From the NCBI GenBank assembly GCA_026770705.1, contig JANJGN010000029.1:28086001-28150000 (forward strand): DNA of 64,000 nucleotides, written 5' to 3'. Below are positions 9,385 to 64,000 of the stretch, one piece after another. Within the stretch, counting starts at the first letter, position 1, and every line of letters starts with the position of its first letter. Made by a program: the position numbers and the translations under genes. Below the pieces are notes generated by a model. That model was given only the letters and a program-made list of their open reading frames with translations, made no database searches and was not told the origin of the DNA. The DNA comes from Isurus oxyrinchus. Its lineage: Eukaryota.

Positions 9385-10447
9385 AGCTGAGGAATTAAAT
9401 GAAAACTTTGCCAAGTCTTTACCAAGGATAAAGATGCTATCCAGGCCATGGTGAGGGAGGTGGTAATTCAGACACCAGAAGGGTTAAAACTTGATAAGGA
9501 GGATTGGATAAGCTGTTTGTACTTAAAGTTAATAAGGCACCAGGATCAGAAGCGATGAGTTCAAGGATACTGAGGGAAGTGAGAGTGGAAATTGCGAAGG
9601 CACTGGCTGTAATTTTTTAGTTTTCATTAGACTCAGGGGTGATGCCAGAGGACTGGAGAATTATAAACATTACACCCTTGTTCAAAATAGGGTGTAAAGG
9701 TAAGCTCAGTAACTACAGACCAGTCAGTTTAACTTCTAGAAACAATAATTCAGGGCAAAATTAATAGCCACATGGACAAATGCGGATTAAATAAGGAAAG
9801 CCAACATGAATTTCTTAAGGGAAAATCTTGTTTAACTAACTTGCTGGAGTTTTTTGAAGAGGTAACAAAGAGGGTTGATGAGGGCAATGCTGTTGATGTA
9901 GTGTACATGGACTTCCAAAAGGCATTTGATACAGTGTCGCACAACAGACTTGTGAGCTCATGGAATAAAAGGGGCAGTAGCAACAGGGACATAAAGTTGG
10001 CTGAGTAACAGGAAACAGAGAGAAGCAGTGAATGGATGTTTTCTGGGTGGAGGAAAGTTTGTAGTGGAGTTCCCTGGGGTCAGAGTTGGGACTCTTGCTT
10101 TTCCTGATATGTATTAATGACCTATACCTTGGTTACAGGGCACAATTTCAAAATTTTCAGATGACACGAAACTTGGAATCATTGTGAACTGTGACGAGGA
10201 TAGTGCAGAACTTCAAAAAGAGATAGACAAGTTGTTGGAATGGGTGGAAAGGTGGTAGATGAAGTTCAATGCAGAGAAATGTGAAATGATTTATTTTGGC
10301 AGGAAGAACATGGAAAGACAATACAAAATAAAGGGTACAAATCAGACAGGCTTCAGGAGCACAGGGACCTGGGTGTGTATGTGCATAAGCTTTTGAAGGT
10401 GGCAGAACAGGTTGAGGGAGCAGTCAATAAAGCATACAATATTCTAG
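9385..10447 (+). mobile_element. CR1-type LINE, 5' part (interrupted by Penelope)
   Basis: KSCLTNLLEFFEEVT...DFQKAFD; continues at 16618. Confidence 0.88.
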
Positions 10448-10484
10448 TTGACGTTTCAAGTCCTCATGACCCTTCAACAGAACT
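10446..10484 (-). ncRNA. Minimal type I hammerhead ribozyme (Penelope-associated), CpG-decayed copy
   Basis: AGTT-CTGTTGA-A-GGGTC-ATGAG-GACTT-GAAAC-GTC^AACT; the last 2 nt are supplied by the TSD. Confidence 0.6.
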
Positions 10485-10872
10485 TGATTTCGAGTCCAAG
10501 AAAGAGTTGAAATATAAGCTGGTTTAAGGTGTGTGTGTGGGGGGCGGAGAGAGAGAGAGAGAGAGAGATGGTTGTGTAGACAAACAAGCAGTGATAGAAG
10601 CAGATCATCAAAAGATGTCAGCGACAATGGTACAATAGAACACATAGGTGTTAAAGTTAAAGTTGGTGATATTATCTAAACGAATGTGCTAATTAAGAAT
10701 GGATGGTAGGGCACTCAAGGTACAGCTCTAGTGGGGGTGGGGGGAGCATAAAAGATTTTAAAATATTTAAAAATAATGGAAATAGGTGGGAAAAGAAAAA
10801 TCTATATAATTTATAGGGGAAAAAAAAGGAAAAAGGGGGAAACAGAAAGGGGGTGGGGATGGGGGAGGGAGC

Positions 10873-13617
10873 TCACGACCTAAAGTTGTTGAATTCAATA
10901 TTCAGACCGGAAGGCTGTAAGGTGCCTAGTCGGAAGATGAGGTGTTGTTCCTCCAGTTTGCGTTGGGCTTCACTGGAACAATGCAGTAAGCCAAGGACAG
11001 ACATGTGGGCAAGAGAGCAGGGTGGAGTGTTAAAATGGCAAGTGACAGGGAGGTTTGGGTCATTCTTGCGGTCAGACCGCAGGTGTTCTGCAAAGCGGTC
11101 GCCCAGTTTACGTTTGGTCTCTCCAATGTAGAGGAGACCACATTGGGAGCAACGAATGCAGTAGACTAAGTTGGGGGAAATGCAAGTGAAATGCTGCTTC
11201 ACTTGAAAGGAGTGTTTGGGCCCTTGGACGGTGAGGAGAGAGGAAGTGAAGGGGCAGGTGTTACATCTTTTGCGTGGGCATGAGGTGGTGCCATAGGAGG
11301 GGGTTGAGGAGTAGGGGGTGATGGAGGAGTGGACCAGGGTGTCCCGGAGGGAGCGATCCCTACGGAATGCCAATAAGGGGGGTGAAGGGAAGATGTGTTT
11401 GGTGGTGGCATCATGCTGGAGTTGGCGGAAATGGCGGAGGATGATCCTTTGAATGCGGAGGCTGGTGGGGTGATAAGTGAGGACAAGGGGGACCCTATCA
11501 TGTTTCTGGGAGGGAGGAGAAGGCGTGAGGGCAGATGCGCGGGAGATGGGCCGGACACGGTTGAGGGCCCTGTCAACGACCGTGGGTGGAAAACCTCGGT
11601 TAAGGAAGAAGGAGGACATGTCAGAGGAACCGTTTTTGAAGGTAGCATCATCGGAACAGATGCGACGAAGGCGAAGGAACTGGGAGAATGGGATGGAGTC
11701 CTTACAGGAAGCGGGGTGTGAGGAGCTGTAGTCGAGGTAGCTGTGGGAGTCGGTGGGTTTGTAATGGATATTGGTGGACAGTCTATCACCAGAGATTGAG
11801 ACAGAGAGGTCAAGGAAGGGAAGGGAAGTGTCAGAGATGGACCACGTGAAAATGATGGAGGGGTGGAGATTGGAAGCAAAATTAATAAATTTTTACAAGT
11901 CCCGACGAGAGCATGAAGCAGCACCGAAGTAATCATCGATGTACCGGAGAAAAAGTTGTGGAAGGGGGCCGGAGTAGGACTGCAACAAGGAATGTTCCAC
12001 ATACCCCATAAAGAGACAGGCATAGCTGGGGCCCATGCGGGTACCCATAGCCACACCTTTTATTTGGAGAAAGTGAGAGGAGTTGAAGGAGAAATTGTTC
12101 AACGTGAGAACAAGTTCAGCCAGACGGAGGAGAGTAGTGGTGGATGGGGATTGTTCGGGCCTCTGTTCGAGGAAGAAGCTAAGGGCCCTCAGACCATCCT
12201 GGTGGGGGATGGAGGTGTAGAGGGATTGGACGTCCATGGTGAAGAGGAAGCGGTTGGAGCCAGGGAACTGGAAATTGTTGATGTGACGTAAGGTGTCAGA
12301 GGAATCACGGATGTAGGTGGGAAGGGACTGGACAAGGGGAGAGAGAAGGGAGTCAAGATAACGAGAAATGAGTTCTGTGGGGCAGGAGCAAGCTGAGACG
12401 ATCGGTCTACCGGGGCAGTTCTGTTTGTGGATTTTGGGTAGGAGATAGAAGCGGGCCGTCCGAGGTTGGGCGACTATCAGGTTGGAAGCTGTGGGAGGGA
12501 GATCCCCAGAGGAGATGTGGTCAGTGACAGTCCTGGAAACAATGGCTTGATGTTCAGTGGTGGGGTCATGGTCCAGGGAGAGGTAGGAGGAAGTGTCTGC
12601 GAGTTGACGCTCAGCCTCCACGAGGTAGAGGTCAGTGCGCCAGACAACAACAGCACCGCCCTTGTCAGCGGGTTTGATGACAATGTCAGGGTTGGACCTG
12701 AGAGAACAGAGTGCAGTAAGTTCAGAGAGAGACAGATTAGAATGGGTGAGAGGAGCAGAGAAATTGAGACGACTACTGTTCTCAATGAACAGATCAAGAG
12801 AAGGTAAGAATCCAGAGGGAGGGGTCCAGGTGGAGGGAGAATATTGGAGATGGGTAAAAGGATCCGTTGAACGGGGAGAGGACTCCTGCCCGAAGAAGTG
12901 AGCCCGGAGATGAAGACAGCGGAAGAAGAGTTCAGCATCGTGCCGAGCCTGAAATTCATTGAGGTGAGGGCGTAAGGGTATGAAACTAAGTCCTTTGCTG
13001 AGCACTGAACGTTCAGCATTGGAGAGGGGAAGGTCAGGGGGTATAGTGAATACACGGCTGGGGTTGGGATTGGAAGAAAGGGTGGGGATGGAGGGACAGG
13101 CAGGGGTGGAGGGTCCTAGATGGGTGTTGGTGTCGATGAGTTGTTGGAGCTTGCGTTCCTTAGCAGTTGAGAGAAAGAGAAAAAGTTTCTTGTTGAGGCG
13201 TCGGATGAGCCGAAGGATAAAATGAAACTGGGGGCACGCGCAGCTTTGAAAAAGGGTACGGCGGTGCTGCTGGAGGGAGAGGTCAAGTGTGTTCATATGG
13301 CGGCGCATGGCACTGAGTGTGGATTTCAGAATGTGACGGGAACAGCAGTCTGAGAAACGTTTTATGTCCCGGAGATACCGGTAATCCTGGGTGGGTTCGA
13401 AAGATGAGGGGTGGAATTTCAGTTGAAATCCACGTGGGGTAAGTCGGAGACGGAGACAGTCACTGAGAAAGGAGATATGGCTGTGAAAGCGGGTTTTAGT
13501 ATACACCTTGTCAAACACCAGGAGGGAAATGGAAAGCAAAGAAGGTGAACAAGGCAACAGAGAGATACGGAAATCTTGTCGCAGAGAGGAACAGAACTTC
13601 TTCAAGGAGGTAGGCAT
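10873..13617 (-). pseudogene. Penelope-like RT + GIY-YIG endonuclease ORF with a single premature stop
   Basis: ORFs 11893-13641 and 10873-11619 share a frame. Motifs KPADKG, LPKIHK...GRPI, DVQSLYT, GVAMG, RYIDD and VYCIRC...YIGET.R...R..EH. TAA at 11893-11895; first ATG at 13617. Confidence 0.93.
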
Positions 13618-13753
13618 TTCTTGAAGAGCAGTGGCAGTCAATTAAACACAGAGATAAAAACAAAACAAAACTGCGGATGCTGGAAATCCAAAACAAAAAC
13701 AGAATTACCTGGAAAAACTCAGCAGATCTGGCAGCATCGGCGGAGAAGAAAAG

Positions 13754-13792
13754 AGTTGACGTTTCGAGTCCTCATGACCCTTCGACAGAACT
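13754..13792 (-). ncRNA. Minimal type I hammerhead ribozyme (variant core CUGUCGA)
   Basis: Stem I AGTT/AACT, core CTGTCGA, stem II GGGTC/GACTC, GAAAC-GTC with palindromic ACGT in place of a stem III loop. Confidence 0.7.
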
Positions 13793-14783
13793 TGATTTCG
13801 AGTCCAAGAAAGAGTTGAAATATAAGCTGGTTTAAGGTGTGTGTGTGGGGGGCGGAGAGATAGAGAGAGAGAGAGAGGTGGTTGTGTAGACAAACAAGCA
13901 GTGATAGAAGCAGATCATCAAAAGATGTCAGCGACAATGGTACAATAGAACACATAGGTGTTAAAGTTGGTGATATTATCTAAACGAATGTGCTAATTAA
14001 GAATGGATGGTAGGGCACTCAAGGTACAGCTCTAGTGGGGGTGGGGGGAGCATAAAAGATTTTAAAATATTTAAAAATAATGGAAATAGGTGGGAAAAGA
14101 AAAATCTATATAATTTATAGGGAAAAAAAAGGAAAAAGGGGGAAACAGAAAGGGGGTGGGGATGGGGGAGGGAGGTCACGACCTAAAGTTGTTGAATTCA
14201 ATATTTAGACCGGAAGGCTGTAAGGTGCCTAGTCGGAAGATGAGGTGTTGTTCCTCCAGTTTGCGTTGGGCTTCACTGGAACAATGCAGTAAGCCAAGGA
14301 CAGACATGTGGGCAAGAGAGCAGGGTGGAGTGTTAAAATGGCAAGCGACAGGGAGGTTTGGGTCATTCTTGCGGACAGACCGCAGGTGTTCTGCAAAGCG
14401 GTCGCCCAGTTTACGTTTGGTCTCTCCAATGTAGAGGAGACCACACTGGGAGCAACGAATGCAGTAGACTAAGTTGGGGGAAATGCAAGTGAAATGCTGC
14501 TTCACTTGAAAGGAGTGTTTGGGCCCTTGGACGGTGAGGAGAGAGGAAGTGAAGGGGCAGGTGTTACATCTTTTGCGTGGGCATGGGGTGGTGCCATAGG
14601 AGGGGGTTGAGGAGTAGGGGGTGATGGAGGAGTGGACCAGGGTGTCCCGGAGGGAGCGATCCCTACGGAATGCCGATAAGGGGGGTGAAGGGAAGATGTG
14701 TTTGGTGGTGGCATCATGCTGGAGTTGGCGGAAATGGCGGAGGATGATCCTTTGAATGCGGAGGCTGGTGGGGTGATAAGTGG

Positions 14784-16617
14784 TGGTCTGAGGGCCCTTA
14801 GCTTCTTCCTCGAACAGAGGCCCGAACAATCCCCATCCACCACTACTCTCCTCCGTCTGGCTGAACTTGTTCTCACGTTGAACAATTTCTCCTTCAACTC
14901 CTCTCACTTTCTCCAAATAAAAGGTGTGGCTATGGGTACCCGCATGGGCTCCAGCTATGCCTGTCTCTTTATGGGGTATGTGGAACATTCCTTGTTGCAG
15001 TCCTACTCCGGCCCCCTTCCACAACTTTTTCTCCGGTACATTGATGATTACTTCGGTGCCGCTTCATGCTCTCGTCGGGACTTGTAAAAATTTATTAATT
15101 TTGCTTCCAATCTCCACCCCTCCATCATTTTCACGTGGTCCATCTCTGACACTTCCCTTCCCTTCCTTGACCTCTCTGTCTCAATCTCTGGTGATAGACT
15201 GTCCACCAATATCCATTACAAACCCACCGACTCCCACAGCTACCTCGACTACAGCTCCTCACACCCCGCTTCCTGTAAGGACTCCATCCCATTCTCCCAG
15301 TTCCTTCGCCTTCGTCGCATCTGTTCCGATGATGCTACCTTCAAAAACGGTTCCTCTGACATGTCCTCCTTCTTCCTTAACCGAGGTTTTCCACCCACGG
15401 TCGTTGACAGGGCCCTCAACCGTGTCCCGCGCATCCGCCCTCACGCCTTCTCCTCCCTCCCAGAAACATGATAGGGTCCCCCTTGTCCTCACTTATCACC
15501 CCACCAGCCTCCGCATTCAAAGGATCATCCTCCGCCATTTCCGCCAACTCCAGCATGATGCCACCACCAAACACACCTTCCCTTCACCCCCCTTATCGGC
15601 ATTCCGTAGGGATCGCTCCCTCCGGGACACCCTGGTCCACTCCTCCATCACCCCCTACTCCTCAACCCCCTCCTATGGCACCACCCCATGCCCACGCAAA
15701 AGATGTAACACCTGCCCCTTCACTTCCTCTCTCCTCACCGTCCAAGGGCCCAAACACTCCTTTCAAGTGAAGCAGCATTTCACTTGCATTTCCCCCAACT
15801 TAGTCTATTGCATTCGTTGCTCCCAATGTGGTCTCCTCTACATTGGAGAGACCAAACGTAAACTGGGCGACCGCTTTGCAGAACACCTGCGGTCTGTCCG
15901 CAAGAATGACCCAAACCTCCCTGTTGCTTGCCATTTTAACACTCCACCCTGCTCTCTTGCCCACATGTCTGTCCTTGGCTTACTGCATTGTTCCAGTGAA
16001 GCCCAACGCAAACTGGAGGAACAACACCTCATCTTCCGACTAGGCACCTTACAGCCTTCCGGTCTGAATATTGAATTCAACAACTTTAGGTCGTGAGCTC
16101 TCTCCCCCATCCCCACCCCCTTTCTGTTTCCCCCTTTTTCCTTTTTTTTCCCCTATAAATTATATAGATTTTTCTTTTCCCACCTATTTCCATTATTTTT
16201 AAATATTTTAAAATCTTTTATGCTCCCCCCACCCCCACTAGAGCTGTACCTTGAGTGCCCTACCATCCATTCTTAATTAGCACATTCGTTTAGATAATAT
16301 CACCAACTTTAACTTTAACACCTATGTGTTCTTTTGTACCATTGTCGCTGACATCTTTTGATCTGCTTCTATCACTGCTTGTTTGTCTACACAACCACCT
16401 CTCTCTCTCTCTATCTCTCCGCCCCCCACACACACACCTTAAACCAGCTTATATTTCAACTCTTTCTTGGACTCGAAATCAAGTTCTGTCGAAGGGTCAT
16501 GAGGACTCGAAACGTCAACTCTTTTCTTCTCCGCCGATGCTGCCAGACCTGCTGAGTTTTTCCAGGTAATTCTGTTTTTGTTTTGGATTTCCAGCATCCG
16601 CAGTTTTCTTTGTTTTT
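14784..16617 (+). mobile_element. 5'-truncated inverted Penelope copy (mid-RT to 3' end)
   Basis: Reverse complement of ~12196->10448, extended through the tail; same TAA (15085-15087); 11-bp deletion near 15427. Confidence 0.92.
16482..16520 (+). ncRNA. Minimal type I hammerhead ribozyme (variant core CUGUCGA)
   Basis: Same 39-nt motif; predicted cleavage after 16516. Confidence 0.7.
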
Positions 16618-17250
16618 ATACAATATTCTAGCTTTATTAATAGGGACAGAGTATAAGAGCAAGGATGTTGAATTTGTATAAGACACTAGTTTGGCCTCAG
16701 CTGGCATATTGCATCTAGTTCTGGACACCAAACTTTAGGAAGGATACAAAGGCATTGGAGGGAGTGCAGAAAAGATTCATGAGAATGGTTACAGGGATAA
16801 GGAACTTCAGTTATGAAGACAGATTGGAAAAGTTGGGACTGTTTTCCTTGGAGTAAAGAAGGCTGAGAGGAGATTTGATAGAGGTATTCAAAATCATGAG
16901 GGGTCTGGACAGAGTAGAGAAGGAGAAACTGCTCCCACTCATGAAAGGATCGAGAACCCGAGGGCACAAATTTAAAGTAACTGTCAAAAGAATCAAAAGC
17001 AACATGAGGAAAAACATTTCCACACAGCGAGTGGTTAGGGTTTGGAATGCACTGCCTGAGTGTGGTGGAGACAGGTTCAGTTGAAGTATTCAGAATGGAA
17101 TTAGGCTGTTATCTGAAAAGGAAGAATGTCCGGGGATACGGGGAGAAGGCAGGAGAATGGCACTAAGGGGATTGCTCATTCGGAGAGCGGTGCAGATATG
17201 ATGGACCAAATGGCCTCCTTCTGTGCTGTAACAATTCTGTGATTCTGTGA
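16618..17250 (+). mobile_element. CR1-type LINE, 3' part (after Penelope)
   Basis: LIEVFKIMRGLDRV...TRGH...WNALP; (TTCTGTGA)n tail. Confidence 0.88.
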
Positions 17251-44500: not shown

Positions 44501-47500
44501 CTCAGCCATGTGAGTATGAGTTTATTGTTTGGATAGACCCTCGGACCAGTGCACTCCAGACTATATGTTCTGTTAACTTCCAGCACTTCAGGAGGTGGAG
44601 TAATGTTTATCTCTCGATCTGTTAAAAGAGAATCACAGTGAACAGAATGCACTGAAATCAAGTACTTAGTACTCCCTGTTCCTTCTCCTTACACAGTCAG
44701 ATGTATGAGTGGTACAATAAGGATTTACCCCAACAACAAATACCGGAGATTCAATCTCTTTCATTGAAAATTAGTACATTGATCTCTTTTCATTCTGAAT
44801 TCCCAACATCAAAAGTAATTAAATTATTAATTGTAAACAATAACAATTTGCACTTATATAGAGCCTTCAATATAGTAAAACATCCCCAAACCTGACATAA
44901 GAGCGTTTTCAAAAAAATCTGGCAGCAAGTTATATAAGGAGATATTAAAGCAGATGACTAAAAGCTTGGAGATAAGGGTAGATTTTAAGGAGAGTTTTAA
45001 AGGAGGAGAGAGAGAGAGAGAGAGAGACAGAGAGGTTAGGGAGTGATTCCACATCCTAGAACCTTGGCAACTTAAGTCATAGTTGTCAACTCTGGAGTTA
45101 AAATCAGGGGTGCACCAGAGAACAAAATTGGAGCAGTGTAGAGGGCAGGCGGGGTTGTTGGGCTGGTGGAGGTTACAGAGATAGGGAGTGGCGGCATCAT
45201 GGACACTTTTGAATGTTTGTTTCAAAGCAGCCAGCAGTGTATTGGTGAGATAATGAACTGTGGTACTAATGTTCCCACACAGAAAAGAACTAATCACAGA
45301 ATGGAGAGGCTTAAAATGGATTCAAGGTAGGAGGAAGGTGAAAACCAGTGGCAAGTAAATTAGTTTTAGGAAGGAGAATCAGGGGCAGGAACTGGTTTTG
45401 GTGGATCAGTATGCTGACCAACTTGGCTGGTCTTAATTAGAACTATGAGATAAAGCGTGTTAATTACCTTCTTCTATTTCAACCTTCCAGCATTTCAATC
45501 ACCAACAATAGAAATCTACTGAACCAGTAATCTCTATCGCTAAACATTATCTCATTGGATAAAAACAAAACAAAACTGCGGATGCTGGAAATCCAAAACA
45601 AAAACAGAATTACCTGGAAAAACTCAGCAGGTCTGGCAGCATCGGCGGAGAAGAAAAGAGTTGACGTTTCGAGTCCTCATGACCCTTCGACAGAACTTGA
45701 TTTCGAGTCCAAGAAAGAGTTCAACTCTTTCTTGGACTCGAAATCAAGTTCTGTCGAAGGGTCATGAGGACTCGAAACGTCAACTCTTTTCTTCTCCGCC
45801 GATGCTGCCAGATCTGCTGAGTTTTTCCAGGTAATTCTGTTTTTGTTTTATTATCTCATTGGAAGCGTTTTCACTTACTGTAAACAGTGACCACTTTTTT
45901 TGCAGTCTTCTCTTCTCCACACCTCACAAAACATGGCACAGAGATATCCCATGCCTCGACACTTGGGAAAAAGTCAGCTACCCATTTATCACCGTTAGTT
46001 CTGTTAGGATTTATCCCTGATTTATACTCCACCATAATTAATGGCTCAGAATCTTCACATGTTGTACTGCAGTTTGCCCTCAGCGAGTCTCCAAATTCCA
46101 GAGCTGGGGGGTTTGTGTCGATCCAAATTTCAAATCCAGCCAGGCTTGCTGCCAAGAAAACAAACCAAAGTAAATACAGGGGCATGGAACCCATTCAGTG
46201 TAGGACATATTCAGAGTAACTCCCAGAGGTAATACAAAAAACAAGCCTCTCTTTAAAGTAGGAACATATTGTTGCAGCTGATGTTATTCGCTGAGCAAGC
46301 CAAATCCCAGAGGGAGAGCCTTACTGATCATAACTTTTTTTTTGCGTTTTGAAAACAAGGGAAAGAACTACTGACCCCAGAAGCATAGAATCCCAGTAAC
46401 ACCTTTAGGATTTTAAAATTAAAAGATTTATTAACAAGGAGGAAAAAAATTAAGCACAAAAGATTAAAATTACACTTTTGAAACAATCTTACAAAACATC
46501 CCCCCCAATAACTCACTTGGTCAAAACACATAAATAAACTCTTGGCAACAACTCCCTTATACGAGAATCGCAAGGACTTCCATTCTCTGAATGTTCAGCT
46601 GGTGTTCAACCACCACAAACGCATCCTACAGGTCTGCGCACGATTCCCAGTAGGTGTCCATGGTTCCTACATTCTCAGTATGTCTCAGATCCCTGACGTT
46701 GTTCAGGGTCCACAGAGGCTGCAGGTTGGCTCCTCGGGGACAAGGCCTACCCGCAGAGGATGTGGCTGAAGATGCCTGTGCAGCAGCCTCAGACTGCAGC
46801 AGAGAGAAGATGCAGCAAACCATTGGGATGCTGAAGATGAGATTCTGGTGCCTGGACCGTTCTGGTGGAGCCCTGCCTTTCATCCCACAGAGGTTGTCGT
46901 CATCTGCTGCGCCCTCCACAACCCTTGAAGATGAGGATAACGGTGATGAGGCCATTACATTGGCCAGATGAGGCAGGCGTGGTCAGGAGGCCCTCACAGC
47001 TGCTAGATTCATGGAGGATGATGACAACATGCAGTGAGGAGACTCCATAGATCCTCACATTGTATCTGTGAACTTCTGACTCCTGTCTGGCTGATGGCAG
47101 CACACATCACCTTCTGTGATATGGCTCCTGTCATGGAGATGCAGCAAATGCCCATAGTCTCTACATTCCAGGAGGATGATGACAACATGCAGTGGGGAGA
47201 CTCCATAGATCCTCACATAGGTTAAGTAAACGTCTGAATCCTGTCTGGCTGATGCCACCTCGCTTGCGCTCTGTGAACAGGGTCATATCAAGGAAATGCA
47301 GCAGGGAAACTTCTCCTGATCCTATGGCATCCTTTGTGAGCTGAACCCTTCAGGACCACACTGTCACCGGACACAGGTGCTGATGAGATGGAGGGCCAGC
47401 TGCATCTCAAAAGGTGCTGGGAACACACAGAGAAGATGCTGGAACTCCGTGCTGCTGGCTCAGGATATTCTGGCACCAATGATTAGCCCCATCGAGGTGC

Positions 47501-53500: not shown

Positions 53501-56500
53501 CACAGAAATATAAAACCGTCAGTGATTCTATGCTTCTCCACATGGAGTACTGGTGAAGTCCCTGCATTTGGTAATCAATTAGAAATCAGTGAACCGATGA
53601 AAAGTTGGACTTTTACGCCATTAATTTTGCTGAAAAAAACCCTTAAAAGAGTTACACAAAATCACAGAATGATTACCGCACAGAAAGAGTCCATTCAGCC
53701 CATCATGCCTGTGTTGGCTCTCTGAAGGAGCAAGTGCCATTTCCCCATCTTCTTCCCTTAACCCTGCACATTCTTCCTTTTCAGATAATAATCCAATTGC
53801 CTCAAATGTCTCAATTGAATCTGCCTCCACCCCACTCTCTGGCAGGGTATTCCAGATCTTAACCACCCACTGTGTGAAAAAGATTTTCCTCATGTCCCCA
53901 CTGCTTCTTTTGCCAATTACCTTAAATCTGTGCCCTTTGGTTCTTGATCCTTCCACCAATGGGAGCAGTTTCTCCCTATCTACTCTGTCCAAACCCCTCA
54001 TGATTTTGAATACCTCTATCAAATCACCTCTCAACCTTCTCCTCCAAGAAAAACAGTCCCATCTTCTCCAGCCTAAACTGAAGTTCTTCATCCTTGGAAA
54101 CATTCTCACGAATCTGTTCTGCACACTCCTTCTAAAAGCATGGCACCAGAACTGCATGCAGCACTCCAGTTGAGGCCAAACCAGTATTTTAAATAAGTTT
54201 AACATAACCTCCTTTCTCTTGTACTCTATGCCCCTATTAAAGCCTGGGATACTATATGCTTTATTAACCAACCTCTCAATCTGTCTTGCTAACTTCAATG
54301 ATTTATGCACATATATTCCCAGATCCCTTTGCTTCTACACCCACTTTAGATTTGTACCCTTTATTTTATATTGTCTCTGCATTCTTTCTAGCAAAACTTC
54401 ACATTTCTCTGCATTAAATTTCATCTGCCAATTGTCTGCCCATTTTTAAAAAATCATTTTACAGGATGTGGGCATCGCTGGCTGAGCCAGCACTTATTGC
54501 CCATCCTTATTTGCCCTTGAGAAGGTGGTGGTGAGCTGTCTTCTTGAACCGTTGCAGTCCATGTGGTGTAGGTACACCCACAGTGCTGTTAGGGAGGGAG
54601 TTCCAGGAATTTAACCCAATGACAGTGAAGGAATGGCGATATATTTCCAAGTCAAGATGGTGAGTGACTTGGGGAGGAACTTCTAGGTGGTGGTGTTCCT
54701 ATCTATCTGCTGCCCTTGTCCTTCTAGGTGGTAGCAGTCATGGGTTTGGGAGGTGCTGTCTAAGGATCCTTGGTGAGTTTCTGTAGCAAATCTTGTAGAT
54801 GGTACACACTGCTGCTACTGTGCGTCAGTGGTGGAATGAGTTGTGGAAGGGTTGCCAATCAAGCAGGCTGCTTTGTCCTGGATGATATTGATCTTCTTGA
54901 GTGTTGTTGGAGCTGCACTCATCCAGGCAAGTGGAGAGTATTCTATCACAGTCCTGACTTGTGCCTTGTAGGTGGTGGACAGGCTTTGGGGAGTCAGGAG
55001 GTGAGTTACTCGTCACAGGATTCCTAGCCTCTGACCTGTTCTTTGTAGCCACAGTATTTATATGGCTTGTCCAGTTCAGTTTCTGGTCATGTTAACTCCC
55101 AGGATGTTGATAGTGGGGGATTCAGCGATGGTAATGCCATTGAATGTCAAGGGATGATGGTTAGATTCTCTCTTGTCCGAGATAGTCATTGCCTGGCACT
55201 TTACAGGTGAAATGTCATATTTCTCCATGATAAAAAATCAATCAATTTTTTAAAATTATTTTTTGAAGTTATCATTTCAGCTTTTACCTTAATCCCATGC
55301 GTTTGTCCCAATCATTAAATTAAAAATTTAGAGAGCAAAATAAAAGTGAAAATTGTTTTGTTTAACTTTCGGGTTTGCTGTGAGAATATTTCAACGAGAT
55401 TAGCTGCATACCCGACTTCATGACATCACTGTTGCTGGATCCTTGGAAATTCCCCTGGCTTGGTACCAGATTCAAGCTGACATTTAGAAAGGGTAAATTC
55501 ACAGTCACGGAGCTGGTTTTATTTTTGTAGACAGCTTGCTTCGAACTCAGTGGCGAATGTTGTCACAGTTTGCCGCTAACCGCAAAATCCAGGCAAAGAC
55601 ATAGAACCCTCTCATTGCTGCTAGAATTCAAGGAATCGCCCAAAATGGTTTCCACTGGAGTGCTAAATACTGAAGGAACAGTTATGTGTATAAAGACGAG
55701 GCATCCTTGTTCATATACCCACAATAACTCCCACGCTTACGAACCAGGTACCTGGCAACCTCCAGCTTGCTTTTATTGGAGAGCGACTTTAAGCCCCCAA
55801 ATCGGATACCCTCTGTTGGGTGGACCTCTTGCAGCAAAGGTGCCAGTCCCAAGCCCGTACAAAGGGCTGTAAAATCAGTTCCCTATCACAGCTTCTCCTT
55901 TTACTGCAGCCATGTTGCACGTTGGGTTTTATGCGCCCCAACTATGTCATGAGACAAGACAACATAGGCTTTTGGTGAAATTAGGGATGGATCTTCGCTG
56001 CAAAAAGCCTGGGGTAATCGTGTACATGGGGGTGCAGAGTTAAATGTGATATCTCTATACTGCTCGTTTACTAGCACTATAACACTAATCGTCAATGGTG
56101 CAAATGCCACTTCCAAAAGGCGTCTCTGCTTCAGTGTTAATAGCTCTCGTTGAAATAATGTGAACAGAATGGGGAGGTCATTGCGACCAACTAAAGTTCT
56201 CACTCCCCGGAGCCGCTGCTTCCTTTGCTCGGGTTAAATGATAAGAGACTGTCCGCCTCTGGGAAATAACATATAACCTATCTTATATTCATCATTACAA
56301 AACACAATAAACATTGGAGGGAACGGTTAGTTAATGCGAGACACGTTTATCACAAGACAACATAGGCGTGCATAGGAACAACATTTCGAGATAAAACTCA
56401 AGCCTGAACTTCAATAAATCATTCCCTTCACTTCTTTCAGAACATAGCAGAAACACACCCGGTGTTAATGAATAACTAATTAAATGGTAGGAAAGTCAAG

Positions 56501-57002: not shown

Positions 57003-57103
57003 ACAAAACAAAAACAAAAATACCTGGAAAAACTCAGCAGGTCTGGCAGCATCTGCGGAGAGAAACACAGTTAACGTTTCGAGTCCTCATGACCCATTTA
57101 TGT
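57003..57103 (-). mobile_element. Short Penelope tail insertion (related subfamily, hammerhead truncated)
   Basis: 13-bp TSD TAGAAAATAAAGG (56990-57002 and 57104-57116); GGGTCATGAGGACTCGAAACGTTAACT...; 8-nt filler. Confidence 0.85.
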
Positions 57104-57234: not shown

Positions 57235-57810
57235 ATACCTCCTCACCCCCAGTTACTCTTTGCAGTTACCTCCTCATGGTTATTCATTGCAGTTACCTCC
57301 ATCATTCCCAGTTACTCTTTGCAGTTACCTCCTCATTCTTGGTTATTCATTGCAGTTACCTCCATCACCCCCAGTTATTCATTACTGCTACCTCCTCATT
57401 CCCAGTTACTCATTGTGGTGACCATTCGGCACCATTCATAACTCCTCATACTGAAGCAGTCCATGTCCAAATGCAGCAAGACCTGGACAATATCCAGGCT
57501 TGGGCTGACAAGTGGCAAATGACATTTGCACCACACAAGTGCCAGGCAATGATCATCTCCAACAAGTGAGAATCTAACCATCGCCCCTTGACGTTCAATG
57601 GCATTACCGTCAAAGAATCCCCCACTATCCTTATTCCTGGTTACTCATTGCGGTCCCCCTCAGTCCCAGTTACTCTTTGTTGTTAACTCCCCACACCTGG
57701 TTACTCGTTGCAGTTACCTCCTCACTCCTAGTTACTCGCTCTGGTTACCTCCATCACATCTGATTTCTCATTGCAGTTACTTCCTCACACCTAGTTATTC
57801 ATTACAGTTA
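57235..57810. repeat. Minisatellite (~29-30 bp unit, CAGTTACTCTTTGCAGTTACCTCCTCA-like) interrupted by a LINE fragment (~57415-57630)
   Basis: Repeated GTTAYTCWTTGCAGTTACCTCC units; DLDNIQAWADKWQ fragment in the middle. Confidence 0.8.
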
Positions 57811-57959: not shown

Positions 57960-58680
57960 CTGAAACTAAGGTCATGGTTTACTGAGAAGTATTGTCTTTT
58001 AGACCTTGAAAACCAATAACAGGCACTTCAAAGCACTGGAGAAGTACCAGCAGTGCCTTCACAAGATCCTCCAAGTCTGGTAACAAAGAGAGTCCAACAG
58101 CAGCATCCTCTTCCAAGCCAACTTTCCCAGCATCAAGGTATTAATCATTCAAAGCCAGTTCTGCTCAGCTGGACACCAGACTCCTGAAGCAACTCGGAAA
58201 TTAGACACAGCAGGAGACTCCCAGGAGAATTACAGAAATGTTTCAGGGATGTCCTCGAAAGACCCCCGAAGAGGTTAAGCATATTCATCAACACATGTGG
58301 CCAACTAAAATAGAGGAAGCTTATTTGGGAAGGCATTGAACACATGGAGAGACTTCATCAGGAACATGCAGAGACAAAGTCAAGGCATTGGAGGGAGTGT
58401 GCACATCTTGAAATAACCTATCTACCCAATCCTTGAAGCATGTCAATCAAGTTCTGTCGAAGGGTCATGAGGACTCGAAACGTCAAATCTTTTCTTTTCC
58501 GCCGATGCTGCCAGACCTGCTGAGTTTTTCCAGGTAATTCCGTTTTTGCCTTGAAGCACCTCCTGGCCCACATATGACAGAGTCTGCAGATCGCACATTG
58601 GTCTTAGCAGCCATTTCAGAACCCATTGAACTGGAGTGCAAGCAAATCACCCTCAATCCTGAGAGACTGCCTAAGAAGAG
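57960..58680 (+). mobile_element. RTE LINE 3' remnant
   Basis: Homologous to the reverse complement of 21245-21900. Confidence 0.7.
58441..58548 (+). mobile_element. Short Penelope hammerhead plus tail insertion
   Basis: 10-bp TSD CCTTGAAGCA (58431-58440 and 58549-58558); hammerhead 58450-58488; inside an RTE remnant. Confidence 0.88.
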
Positions 58681-63291: not shown

Positions 63292-64000
63292 GGGCACGAT
63301 TTTACCGTCAGCGAGTGGGGACAGAGCCCGCTCGCTGATGTGTAAAATGACACATGGTGATGTCGGGCAGAATTCCCGATGTCACTGCGCCCCATTTAAA
63401 TCTTCTGGAAGGCGGGGCCGCAGCAAAATCAGCTGCGCGCCCGCCGACCTGTTTGAGGCCATTGACAGATCAATTAAAATAATTAGTGGACCTGCCTGTC
63501 CAACCTTAATAATAATAATAATAGTTCTGTCGAAGGGTCATGAGGACTCGACAGGTCAACTCTTTTCTTCTCCGCCGATGCTGCCAGACCTGCTGAGTTT
63601 TTCCAGGTAATTCTGTTTTTGTTCTGTCCAACCTTAAGTTTGGCAGTCAGACCGGGAGCCCCGGGGGCAACTAGAAAAAACATGACACCTCACCCACAGG
63701 CGGGATGAGGTTTCATGTAGGCTTTAAAAATGTTTAACAGAGATTGTGTAAAAATTATGGACACATCCCAACTCATCTGACATTGTCACATGAGGGAACA
63801 TGTAAGGGAAATTTTATTTTCCTCCTTTTATCTTTTTTACACATAGGGCCGATCTCCTTGAGGCCGCACTCAGCCTTAGGGAGATGAATGCGCTCTTTTG
63901 TGCGTATGGGTGAAAGAGCGCACTCTCGATTTTAGGCATAGCGCTTCCCTGCAGACGTCATGCTGGGCGGCTTTAGTTGGCCCACCACATAAAATGTCAC
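63292..64000. mobile_element. Harbinger-type MITE, runs off the window
   Basis: GGGCACGATTTT terminus; similar to the reverse complement of 59645-60329. Confidence 0.72.
63510..63623 (+). mobile_element. Short Penelope hammerhead plus tail insertion
   Basis: 14-bp TSD CTGTCCAACCTTAA (63496-63509 and 63624-63637); (TAA)n filler; hammerhead 63523-63561 with mutated GAAAC; inside a MITE. Confidence 0.88.

What the first reader, a model, noticed from the sequence alone, without database searches (positions are those of the whole stretch)
45546..45878. 290-bp palindromic double-hammerhead insertion 29 nt from the D1 exon splice donor
Seen: two Penelope 3' ends joined head-to-head form 127-bp arms with a 1-nt centre (45722) and one mismatch, flanked by a 14-bp TSD. 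Each strand carries one sense and one antisense hammerhead. It looks like a MITE but is made of retroelement sequence. Inference: in the ICAM-like pre-mRNA it forms a long dsRNA next to the exon 2 donor, which would sequester the ribozyme and could affect splicing or feed ADAR/Dicer. On that strand the mismatch is A:C, a context ADAR is known to favour. The left arm also brings a sense CAG|GTAATT donor and pyrimidine-rich acceptors.
Basis: partly seen in the sequence, partly recalled or inferred. Interest (0 to 1): 0.8.

Follow-up and report, generated by a model that had tools for sequence, protein, structure and literature searches.

The report
Two-armed Penelope retroelement hairpin in intron
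A 290-bp perfect hairpin beside an immune-adhesion gene exon is a real, young insertion made of two back-to-back tail ends of a very abundant Penelope-like jumping gene; this insertion shape is already known for that element class, and the neighbouring exon is still spliced at its normal site.

Summary
The arms are 45595-45721 and 45723-45849 (127 nt, one mismatch), with centre 45722. A 14-bp target-site duplication flanks a 290-bp insert at intron position +30 of an ICAM_N-domain exon on the minus strand.

Contigs from a sister organism join 45545 directly to 45850, which is an empty site. Contigs from the source organism bridge both outer junctions. It is therefore a genuine, lineage-specific insertion and not an assembly artefact.

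The arms are the 3' end of a Penelope-like element (PLE) whose RT and GIY-YIG ORFs lie at 10446-16617 in the same window. One arm carries the 35-nt "tail" and the other ends at the internal short end. The arms also differ at a subfamily marker. This fits published PLE behaviour: inverted 5'-truncated copies, a tail at one end, and cleavage and extension of both target strands from two RT start sites.

The "hammerhead" has a non-canonical core (CUGUCGA, A6 to U) and gives no Rfam hit at E up to 10. RNA contigs from organisms with and without the insert share the same exon boundary, so no change in donor site is seen. ADAR or Dicer effects were not tested.

The reads, and earlier unchecked notes of this scan on other DNA of the same genome, show many similar hairpins. 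Verdict: a new member of a known kind, of low to moderate interest.

The parts
45546..45559 (.). Left copy of the 14-bp target-site duplication ATTATCTCATTGGA
   Evidence: present once in the organism B empty-site contig (X5 record 26)
45560..45594 (-). 35-nt PLE 'tail' (sense GGATTTCCAGCATCCGCAGTTTTGTTTTGTTTTTA on the minus strand). It is the distal 3' end of the element and is present only on the left copy.
   Evidence: The same tail ends the copies at 13656 and 16617. Published as an optional 30-40 bp tail at one end (PMC8557442, PMC3846280) lying between two RT start sites (PMC11167929).
45595..45721 (-). Left arm: the PLE 3' end with its sense strand on the minus strand, which is the same strand as the host gene
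   Evidence: blastn against the PLE copy 14700-16617: q1759-1918 matches 45721-45561 at 98.8%
45722..45722 (.). Centre base C. It is templated by the right copy (q1758). 45720-45721 (TT) fit both copies, giving a 2-nt microhomology at the head-to-head joint.
   Evidence: q1756-1885 matches 45720-45849; q1759-1918 matches 45721-45561
45723..45849 (+). Right arm: the PLE 3' end with its sense strand on the plus strand. It ends at the internal 'short' 3' end (q1885) and has no tail.
   Evidence: Three independent mini-insertions in the window end at the same place: q1886 (57004), q1881 (58548) and q1883 (63623).
45850..45863 (.). Right copy of the 14-bp target-site duplication
45747..45785 (+). 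Hammerhead-like motif of the right arm: AGUU-CUGUCGA-A-GGGUC-AUGAG-GACUC-GAAAC-GUC|AACU. Position 6 of the core is U, not A.
   Evidence: no Rfam hammerhead at E up to 10
45659..45697 (-). The same hammerhead-like motif in the left arm, in sense on the host gene strand
45631..45631 (.). The only arm mismatch (G here, T at 45813), which is A:C in the gene-strand RNA. The right-arm variant is a pre-existing minority subfamily marker. It is also carried by the copy at 13690-13816 and by contigs of organism B.
   Evidence: (table 3, place 45813)
45608..45616 (-). Element-borne CAG|GTAATT on the gene strand. It is a potential cryptic donor, buried in the hairpin.
   Evidence: no use seen in RNA contigs
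45879..46156 (-). Host exon encoding an ICAM N-terminal (D1) Ig domain, with donor ACA|GTAAGT at 45879|45878. The 5' boundary is uncertain by 8 nt: RNA contigs match as far as 46156, but the only AG acceptor puts the start at 46148, which would give a 270-nt phase 1-1 exon.
   Evidence: Pfam ICAM_N 30.2 bits, cutoff 21; RNA contigs X15 and X17 (table 8)

Best explanation
This is a young, non-coding, dead-on-arrival retrotransposition product of a very abundant Penelope-like element (PLE) family. Shown: the target was cut with a 14-bp stagger, giving the TSD. The insert consists of two outward-facing PLE 3' ends. The left copy ends at the distal tail end (q1918) and the right copy at the internal short end (q1885). 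These are the same two ends used by independent copies of the family. The insert is absent from a sister organism whose flanks differ by about 1.4%. Inferred: both 3'-OH ends of the cut primed reverse transcription on PLE RNA (target-primed reverse transcription on both strands). They probably used two RNA molecules, because the arms differ at a pre-existing subfamily marker. Each event used one of the element's two RT start sites. The two short antisense cDNAs reached q1759 and q1756. They were then joined head-to-head through a 2-nt TT/AA microhomology at a natural quasi-palindrome (TTCAA), and each was completed on the other. As a consequence, the minus-strand ICAM-like pre-mRNA carries a 127-bp near-perfect hairpin starting 29 nt after the D1-exon donor. 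Each strand carries one sense and one antisense copy of a hammerhead-like motif whose core is non-canonical. The exon is still spliced at its normal donor. Any editing, dicing or quantitative splicing effect remains inference.
For: Palindrome, TSD and asymmetry. PLE identity of the arms: 98.8-99.2% identity to the 3' end of a copy with RVT_1 and GIY-YIG ORFs. Canonical ends: the tail end recurs at 13656 and 16617. The short end recurs at 57004, 58548 and 63623. Loose ends with unrelated flanks pile up at 45594/45595, and those at 45572 have a weak A-rich consensus, in both organisms (table 7). A second insertion with two outward 3' ends inside one TSD lies at 10446-16617. Empty site in organism B and both junctions bridged in organism A: table 8. 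Subfamily marker: the copy at 13690-13816 is 100% identical to the right arm. At 45813, about 1.6 million units of word depth are laid on the right-arm (T) position, against about 26 million at the nearest tabulated left-arm place (45636); this is a rough proxy for the marker's share of the family. Organism B, which lacks this insert, shows it too. Microhomology at the joint. Literature: a PLE protein cleaves and extends both target strands and starts RT at two adjacent internal sites that delimit the tail (PMC11167929). An inverted 5'-truncated copy plus a 30-40-bp tail at one end is typical (PMC8557442). Head-to-head repeats with palindromes at the junction are abundant (PMC3846280). Normal exon boundary in RNA contigs with and without the insert.
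Against: The near-equal lengths of the two arms (ends only 3 nt apart) are not predicted by two independent cDNAs. They need either annealing at a short palindromic site or a shared template end. Snap-back self-priming explains that symmetry more directly. The single mismatch could be a later mutation that happens to match a family variant; I put that chance at roughly 5-10%. The centre of the palindrome itself was not shown in an independent contig. All read evidence is from k-mer contigs, not raw reads. The X15 and X17 runs are only guessed to be RNA.
Confidence: 0.75

Rival explanations
1. Snap-back (self-primed) synthesis. A single target-primed cDNA, started at the tail end, folded back or switched template onto itself after about 162 nt. 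It copied itself for 127 nt and was then joined to the other target end. The palindrome would therefore come from one RNA molecule.
For: The joint is almost perfectly symmetric, with a 1-nt centre. Arkhipova et al. 2013 inferred a propensity of Penelope for self-priming from palindromes at inverted junctions (PMC3846280).
Against: The right arm stops exactly at the canonical internal RT start (q1885) used by three independent mini-insertions. A copy-back strand has no reason to stop there. The arms differ at a pre-existing subfamily marker. A 1-nt loop cannot prime in cis. Other head-to-head joints in the reads include clearly asymmetric ones, such as 45671 to 45747 and 45697 to 45756 (table 5).
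Confidence: 0.18
2. The hairpin is functionally relevant to the host gene. As intronic dsRNA next to the D1 donor, it changes exon inclusion or donor choice, or it acts as an ADAR or Dicer substrate that regulates the ICAM-like gene.
For: A 127-bp near-perfect duplex lies 29 nt from the donor, at -272 kcal/mol. There is an A:C mismatch on the gene strand and a cryptic CAG|GTAATT. Inverted Penelope repeats yield siRNAs in Drosophila (PMC3681739). An unchecked note of this scan (s1-868562) reports an A-to-G hypermutated PLE hairpin elsewhere in this genome.
Against: RNA contigs of the insert-bearing organism and of the empty-site organism have the same exon boundary at 45879. The natural donor GTAAGT is strong and lies outside the duplex. 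The insert is young and lineage-specific, so there is no conservation evidence. Similar hairpins are numerous genome-wide, which argues for neutral by-products.
Confidence: 0.1
3. Each arm encodes an active self-cleaving hammerhead ribozyme, so the insert is a true 'double hammerhead'.
For: The motif has the min-HHR architecture described for PLEs: a 4-bp helix I (AGUU/AACU), an unpaired base before a 5-bp helix II, and GAAAC-GUC with a palindromic ACGU that could make helix III in a dimer (PMC4209133). The PLE ribozyme of the anole is protein-assisted (PMC11167929).
Against: The core reads CUGUCGA. Position 6 is invariant A in hammerheads, and from my own knowledge of the classical mutagenesis, substitutions there reduce cleavage by orders of magnitude. 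No Rfam hammerhead model matches at E up to 10. In the hairpin the motif is locked in a 127-bp duplex. In the anole PLE, ribozyme-dead mutants still insert (PMC11167929), so the motif need not be active for the family to spread.
Confidence: 0.1
4. The palindrome is an assembly artefact, or it is a MITE-type DNA transposon.
For: Palindromes are classic assembly errors. The structure superficially looks like TIR plus TSD.
Against: Contigs independent of the assembly bridge both junctions in organism A, and organism B has a precise empty site with one TSD copy. The 'TIRs' are 99-100% identical to the 3' end of an RT/GIY-YIG retroelement in the same window and include its asymmetric tail. No DNA-transposon features were found.
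Confidence: 0.02

Closest known systems
[quoted passage not shown] 2013, PMC3846280; Craig et al. 2021, PMC8557442)
   Same: It is a head-to-head arrangement of PLE 3' portions inside one TSD. The optional 30-40-bp tail is present at one end only. Both copies are 5'-truncated. There is a palindromic or microhomology junction. The hammerhead-type motif sits in the repeated 3' or pLTR part.
   Different: This is the minimal form. There is no ORF and no direct pLTR, only 162 and 127 nt of the 3' end with an almost perfectly symmetric joint, so it mimics a MITE or a pre-miRNA-like hairpin. The TSD is 14 bp, against 8-10 bp in the rotifer examples.
Both-strand cleavage and extension with two internal RT start sites, shown in vitro for the anole Poseidon PLE (Frangieh et al. 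2024, PMC11167929)
   Same: Two cDNA starts face outward from the two strands of one staggered cut. One start is at the distal site (tail present) and one at the proximal site (tail absent). There is no homology between the target and the RT start site.
   Different: In the anole element the start sites lie in an AC-rich stem-loop inside the next ORF. Here they lie in GU-rich tracts just before the ORF. This locus gives in vivo, sequence-only evidence with no biochemistry.
L1 twin priming (5' inversion of LINE-1 insertions)
   Same: The second target strand's 3'-OH primes reverse transcription, and the two cDNAs are joined by microhomology inside one TSD.
   Different: In twin priming the two parts come from different, adjacent regions of one RNA, giving an inversion and not a palindrome. 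Here both arms are the same region of the element and differ at a subfamily marker.
Minimal dimeric hammerheads of PLEs (Cervera and De la Pena 2014, PMC4209133)
   Same: It shares a short helix I, an unpaired base before a long helix II, and no real helix III but a palindromic ACGU. That paper also reports 'dual min-HHRs 100-700 bp apart on opposite strands'.
   Different: The core has U at the invariant A6 position. Only the U3-A8 covariation is reported there as a core exception. No Rfam match was found.
Intronic inverted repeats (for example inverted Alu pairs) as ADAR substrates and splicing modifiers
   Same: A long intramolecular dsRNA lies in a pre-mRNA close to a splice site.
   Different: No editing, small-RNA or splicing change could be shown here. 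The exon boundary is unchanged in RNA contigs.

Membership tests
Penelope-like element insertion (EN+ PLE) | Sequence derived from an element encoding a PLE-type RT and a GIY-YIG endonuclease | tested here: met
   The arms are 98.8-99.2% identical to the 3' end of the copy at 14700-16617. ORFs of that insertion hit RVT_1 (32.8 bits, above cutoff) and GIY-YIG (21.4 bits, just under the 22.6 cutoff).
Penelope-like element insertion (EN+ PLE) | Target-site duplication and 5' truncation, as expected from target-primed reverse transcription | tested here: met
   14-bp TSD. A precise empty site in organism B. Both copies retain only the last 127-162 nt.
Penelope-like element insertion (EN+ PLE) | Inverted 5'-truncated copy and an optional 30-40-bp tail at one end only | tested here: met
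   Head-to-head copies, with a 35-nt tail only at 45560-45594. The definition is taken from PMC8557442 and PMC3846280.
Hammerhead ribozyme (type I, min-HHR of PLEs) | Invariant core CUGANGA ... GAAA ... UH | tested here: not met
   The core is CUGUCGA (U at position 6) in all five intact copies of the motif in the window. No variant at 10% or more was listed at these positions among the family's contigs (table 3). GAAA and GUC are present.
Hammerhead ribozyme (type I, min-HHR of PLEs) | Helices I and II around the core, with helix III formed in a dimer | tested here: met
   Helix I is AGUU/AACU (4 bp) and helix II is GGGUC/GACUC (5 bp). The imposed structure scores -6.6 kcal/mol, against an MFE of -7.8 for a different fold. 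The palindromic ACGU could pair in a dimer; this is inferred.
Hammerhead ribozyme (type I, min-HHR of PLEs) | Match to the curated covariance models (Rfam hammerhead families) | tested here: not met
   No hit at gathering score in the window. None at E up to 10 in 45450-45950 or 16300-16640.
Hammerhead ribozyme (type I, min-HHR of PLEs) | Self-cleavage at the predicted site | not testable with these tools
   This needs in vitro transcription and cleavage assays.
MITE (non-autonomous DNA transposon) | Terminal inverted repeats related to those of a DNA transposon with a transposase | tested here: not met
   The arms are retroelement 3' ends. The two ends are unequal because of the 35-nt tail.
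L1-type twin-priming inversion | The two inverted segments are adjacent, non-redundant parts of one template RNA | tested here: not met
   Both arms cover the same element positions (q1756/1759 to 1885).
ICAM-family gene (host exon) | N-terminal ICAM Ig domain | tested here: met
   Pfam ICAM_N, E = 3.7e-7, 30.2 bits against a cutoff of 21, on the translated exon. Only this single exon was searched.

The most novel reading that the evidence does not exclude
The hairpin is an in vivo footprint of symmetric integration by a dimeric PLE ribonucleoprotein. Both target strands are cut and both prime reverse transcription, each on its own RNA molecule and each at a different one of the two RT start sites (tail and no tail). 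The cDNAs are then paired at a short palindromic site. If so, the thousands of such hairpins in this genome form a natural dataset. The reads also show many head-to-head joints clustered where arms begin at about q1783. That point lies about 31 nt downstream of a TATA-like TTATATTT in the pLTR. The dataset could map PLE RT start sites, template 5' ends and joint rules. It would also be a large pool of intronic dsRNAs available to ADAR and RNAi.
Probability: 0.45. Interest if true: 0.45.

Novelty: new member of a known kind. Interest (0 to 1): 0.27.

Why it matters
The finding gives a clean, dated example (present in one organism, empty in a close relative) of the smallest possible Penelope "two-armed" insertion. 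Its two outer ends match the two reverse-transcription start sites recently defined in vitro. It therefore supports, with natural data, the idea that PLEs prime on both target strands. It also shows how a retroelement can create MITE-like or pre-miRNA-like perfect hairpins inside genes. For the host gene it is at most a candidate modifier: the normal donor is still used. It does not open a new category of element or mechanism.

Tried and rejected
1. Rfam was run at gathering score on the whole window and at E up to 10 on two sub-regions. No hammerhead was found. The only hits, to plant MIR837, MIR7696 and similar families, are all below their gathering scores and symmetric on both strands. They are generic matches of a long perfect hairpin, not evidence of a miRNA gene.

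2. Assembly artefact is rejected on the junction-bridging contigs and the empty site.

3. MITE or DNA transposon is rejected because the arms are the retroelement's 3' end and are unequal.

4. A-to-G editing could not be read from read laying. All four runs are k-mer contigs, and the arms belong to a repeat whose summed word depth is 10-30 million against about 36 for single-copy DNA. The variants listed in the arms are therefore family variants, not editing.

5. A genome-wide census of similar palindromes could not be run, because no eukaryotic genome collection is searchable here. The only evidence is the joints table and unchecked notes of the scan.

6. I looked for evidence that the predicted ribozyme site defines copy ends. 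Mini-element 5' ends (q1778, q1783, q1795) and the 3' end of the copy at 10446 (2-4 nt past GUC) do not coincide with GUC|AAC.

7. One literature look-up on core position 6 failed because the term was too short. The statement about A6 rests on my own knowledge.

Full report
**1. Observation**

- The repeat finder gives arms 45595-45721 and 45723-45849, 127 nt each, 99% complementary, with 1 nt between them. It also gives a 14-bp direct repeat ATTATCTCATTGGA at 45546-45559 and 45850-45863.
- A direct comparison shows one mismatch (45631 G against 45813 T), a centre C at 45722, and 35 extra bases (45560-45594) between the left TSD and the left arm.
- The insert is therefore 45560-45849, 290 bp, and it is not fully symmetric.
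- A 127-nt inverted repeat with one mismatch cannot arise by chance.
- The gene-strand RNA of 45500-45900 folds into a single hairpin of -272 kcal/mol, against -99 +/- 6 for shuffles (z = -31). In that fold the mismatch is A opposite C.

**2. Is it real DNA?**

The four runs laid on 45200-46300 are k-mer contigs, so they show presence and not depth.
- In organism A, the likely source, a 400-nt contig covers 45200-45583. It crosses the left TSD and runs 24 nt into the tail.
- Also in organism A, a 478-nt contig covers 45825-46300. It runs from 25 nt inside the right arm across the right TSD.
- In organism B, a 708-nt contig (X5 record 26) aligns 45293-45545 and then continues directly at 45850-46300. 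This is a precise empty site with one TSD copy.
- The organism B flanks differ from the window at 10 of 704 positions, about 1.4%.
- The insertion is therefore genuine and arose, or was sorted, after the two organisms diverged. The arms match other young copies of the family almost perfectly, which fits a recent event.
- The centre of the palindrome was not shown in an independent contig. That needs PCR or long reads.

**3. What the arms are**

The right arm is 100% identical to 13690-13816 and 99.2% identical to 16458-16584. Those two sites are the outer parts of a 6.2-kb composite insertion at 10446-16617.
- Its ORFs hit RVT_1 (32.8 bits) and GIY-YIG (21.4 bits, just below the cutoff). It is a Penelope-like element (PLE).
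- It has the classic structure. On the minus strand, a 5'-truncated copy (14782 to 13656) is followed in tandem by a long copy (about 13655 to 10446).
- An inverted 5'-truncated copy lies on the plus strand (about 14700-16617). The whole is flanked by a direct repeat, ACAATATTCTAG.

Taking copy 14700-16617 as a ruler (q1-1918):
- The left copy of the hairpin is q1759-1918, and the right copy is q1756-1885.
- Three short solo insertions in the window end at q1886, q1881 and q1883 (57004, 58548, 63623).
- The tail end q1918 recurs at 13656 and 16617.
- In the reads of both organisms, contigs with unrelated flanks pile up at 45594/45595 (agreement 0.34-0.39), which is the short end. Those at 45572, inside the tail's AAAAC repeats, have a weak A-rich consensus (agreement about 0.5) (table 7).
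- The family therefore has two canonical 3' ends about 33-35 nt apart, and the hairpin uses one at each side.

**4. Mechanism**

This matches what is published for PLEs.
- In rotifers, head-to-head inverted pLTRs occur with a 31-bp tail on one of them, inside 8-10-bp TSDs, with palindromes at the inverted junction (PMC3846280).
[quoted passage not shown] It starts reverse transcription at two adjacent internal sites, and the interval between them is the tail (PMC11167929).

I therefore read the hairpin as the minimal product of target-primed reverse transcription on both strands of one 14-bp staggered cut. Three local observations favour two separate priming events over a single cDNA that snapped back.
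- The tail-less arm stops exactly at the canonical internal start site.
- The arms differ at a site where the right-arm base is a pre-existing minority variant of the family. The copy at 13690-13816 shares it, and it carries roughly 6% of the word depth, including in organism B, which lacks this insert. The 6% compares depth at 45813 with depth at 45636, the nearest tabulated left-arm place, so it is a rough figure.
- The joint is a 2-nt microhomology. 45720-45721 (TT) belong to both copies, and the centre C is templated by the right copy. It sits in a natural quasi-palindrome, TTCAA. Two identical antisense cDNAs can pair in trans there, whereas a 1-nt loop cannot prime in cis.

The near-equal arm length is the main point in favour of the snap-back rival, which Arkhipova et al. 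2013 proposed for such junctions. I give it about 0.18.

**5. Similar structures elsewhere**

The joints table lists more than 1,200 joint types in which a contig runs from the antisense arm into the sense arm.
- The best supported cluster is at 45696/45697 to 45746-45750. For example, 45697 to 45747 is seen in 30 contigs in organism A and 19 in organism B, with 0-3 filler bases.
- These are other head-to-head junctions whose arms begin at about q1783, which is the 5' edge of the hammerhead-like motif.
- Some are asymmetric, such as 45671 to 45747 and 45697 to 45756.
- Simple copies also end there: loose ends at 45697 have unrelated flanks, and the mini-elements start at q1778 and q1783.
- That preferred 5' end lies about 31 nt downstream of a TTATATTT in the element. 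This suggests a pLTR-internal transcription start. It is inference only.
- Artefactual fold-back reads from such a high-copy repeat cannot be fully excluded as a source of some joints.
- Unchecked notes of this scan on other DNA of the same genome also describe families of about 100-230-bp Penelope hairpins with TSDs.
- The refutation condition "no similar palindromes elsewhere" is therefore not met.

**6. The 'hammerhead'**

Each arm carries AGUU-CUGUCGA-A-GGGUC-AUGAG-GACUC-GAAAC-GUC|AACU, at 45747-45785 on the plus strand and 45697-45659 on the minus strand.
- The architecture fits the minimal, dimer-dependent hammerheads of PLEs. These have a short helix I, an unpaired base before helix II, and a palindromic ACGU in place of helix III (PMC4209133).
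- However, the core has U where A6 is invariant.
- All five intact copies of the motif in the window have this U.
- No variant at 10% or more appears at these positions among the family's contigs in either organism.
- No Rfam hammerhead model matches even at E up to 10.
- From my own knowledge of the classical mutagenesis, A6 substitutions are strongly deleterious. In the anole element, ribozyme-dead mutants still insert (PMC11167929).
- "Hammerhead-like motif" is the defensible label. Activity is untested and would in any case be blocked inside a 127-bp duplex.
- Cervera and De la Pena had already noted "dual min-HHRs 100-700 bp apart in opposite strands".

**7. Host gene**

- The translated exon hits Pfam ICAM_N (30.2 bits against a cutoff of 21).
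- The donor is ACA|GTAAGT, with GT at 45878-45877 on the minus strand. The insert starts at intron position +30.
- RNA-type contigs from organism A (X15, with the insert) and organism B (X17, empty site) both match exactly 45879-46156 and then continue with sequence not found in the stretch (table 8). The same donor is therefore used with and without the insert.
- No contig shows use of the element-borne CAG|GTAATT (45616-45608) or intron retention. Contigs cannot quantify either.
- ADAR editing or dicing of such a duplex is plausible by analogy (PMC3681739 for Penelope siRNAs) but was not testable here.

**8. Verdict**

The structural interpretation, two Penelope 3' ends head-to-head inside one TSD, is right. 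The "double hammerhead" is a non-canonical motif. The functional inferences are unsupported so far, and the one testable point, donor use, shows no change. The architecture and its likely mechanism are already described for PLEs, so this is a new, unusually compact member of a known kind.

Noticed in passing
window 10446-16617: A 6.2-kb composite PLE insertion. A tandem pair lies on the minus strand (14782 to 13656, then about 13655 to 10446), and an inverted 5'-truncated copy lies on the plus strand (about 14700-16617). It is flanked by the direct repeat ACAATATTCTAG. One outer end is the tail end (16617). The other (10446) stops 2-4 nt past the GUC of the hammerhead-like motif.
   Followed up: partly
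window 57004-57095 (-), 58445-58548 (+), 63523-63623 (+): Three solo mini-insertions of about 92-104 bp from the same PLE 3' end, with their own TSDs of about 7-12 bp. All end at the internal short 3' end (q1881-1886). Two begin at q1778 and q1783. The copy at 63523 has a (TAA)n filler at its 5' junction.
   Followed up: partly
window 45570-45830 (read depth): Summed word depth of contigs laid on the arms is 3-31 million, against about 36 for the single-copy flanks, in both organisms. The last 100 nt or so of this PLE is therefore present at roughly 10^5-10^6 copy equivalents. Depth drops 3-4 fold inside about q1783-1800.
   Followed up: no
window 16447-16482 (and the equivalent positions in other copies): A TATA-like TTATATTT lies about 31 nt upstream of the position (q about 1783, CAAGTTCTG) where mini-elements, simple truncated copies and most head-to-head joints begin. 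This may be a pLTR-internal transcription start that feeds short templates.
   Followed up: no
window 46148-46194 (-): RNA contigs stop matching at 46156, where no AG acceptor precedes. The only AG (46150-46149) would start the exon at 46148, giving a 270-nt phase 1-1 exon. The ORF also continues in frame upstream to an ATG at 46194 with a signal-peptide-like MGSMPLYLLWFVFLAASLAG. This could be an alternative first exon or a relic.
   Followed up: partly
window 45560-45650 (-): The tail (GGAUUUCCAGCAUCCGCAG) can pair with CCGCCGAUGCUGCCAGA about 60 nt upstream. This forms a stem-loop of -18.5 kcal/mol that includes the tail's pairing segment and the short RT start.
   Followed up: partly
window 45665-45779: Rfam E-value hits to plant miRNA precursor families (MIR837 at 82 bits against a gathering score of 117, MIR7696, and others) appear on both strands. 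They are generic long-hairpin matches and not evidence of a miRNA gene.
   Followed up: yes
window 55109-55212 / 57526-57629: Another inverted repeat pair (104 nt, 84% complementary, 2.3 kb apart), unrelated to the PLE arms.
   Followed up: no
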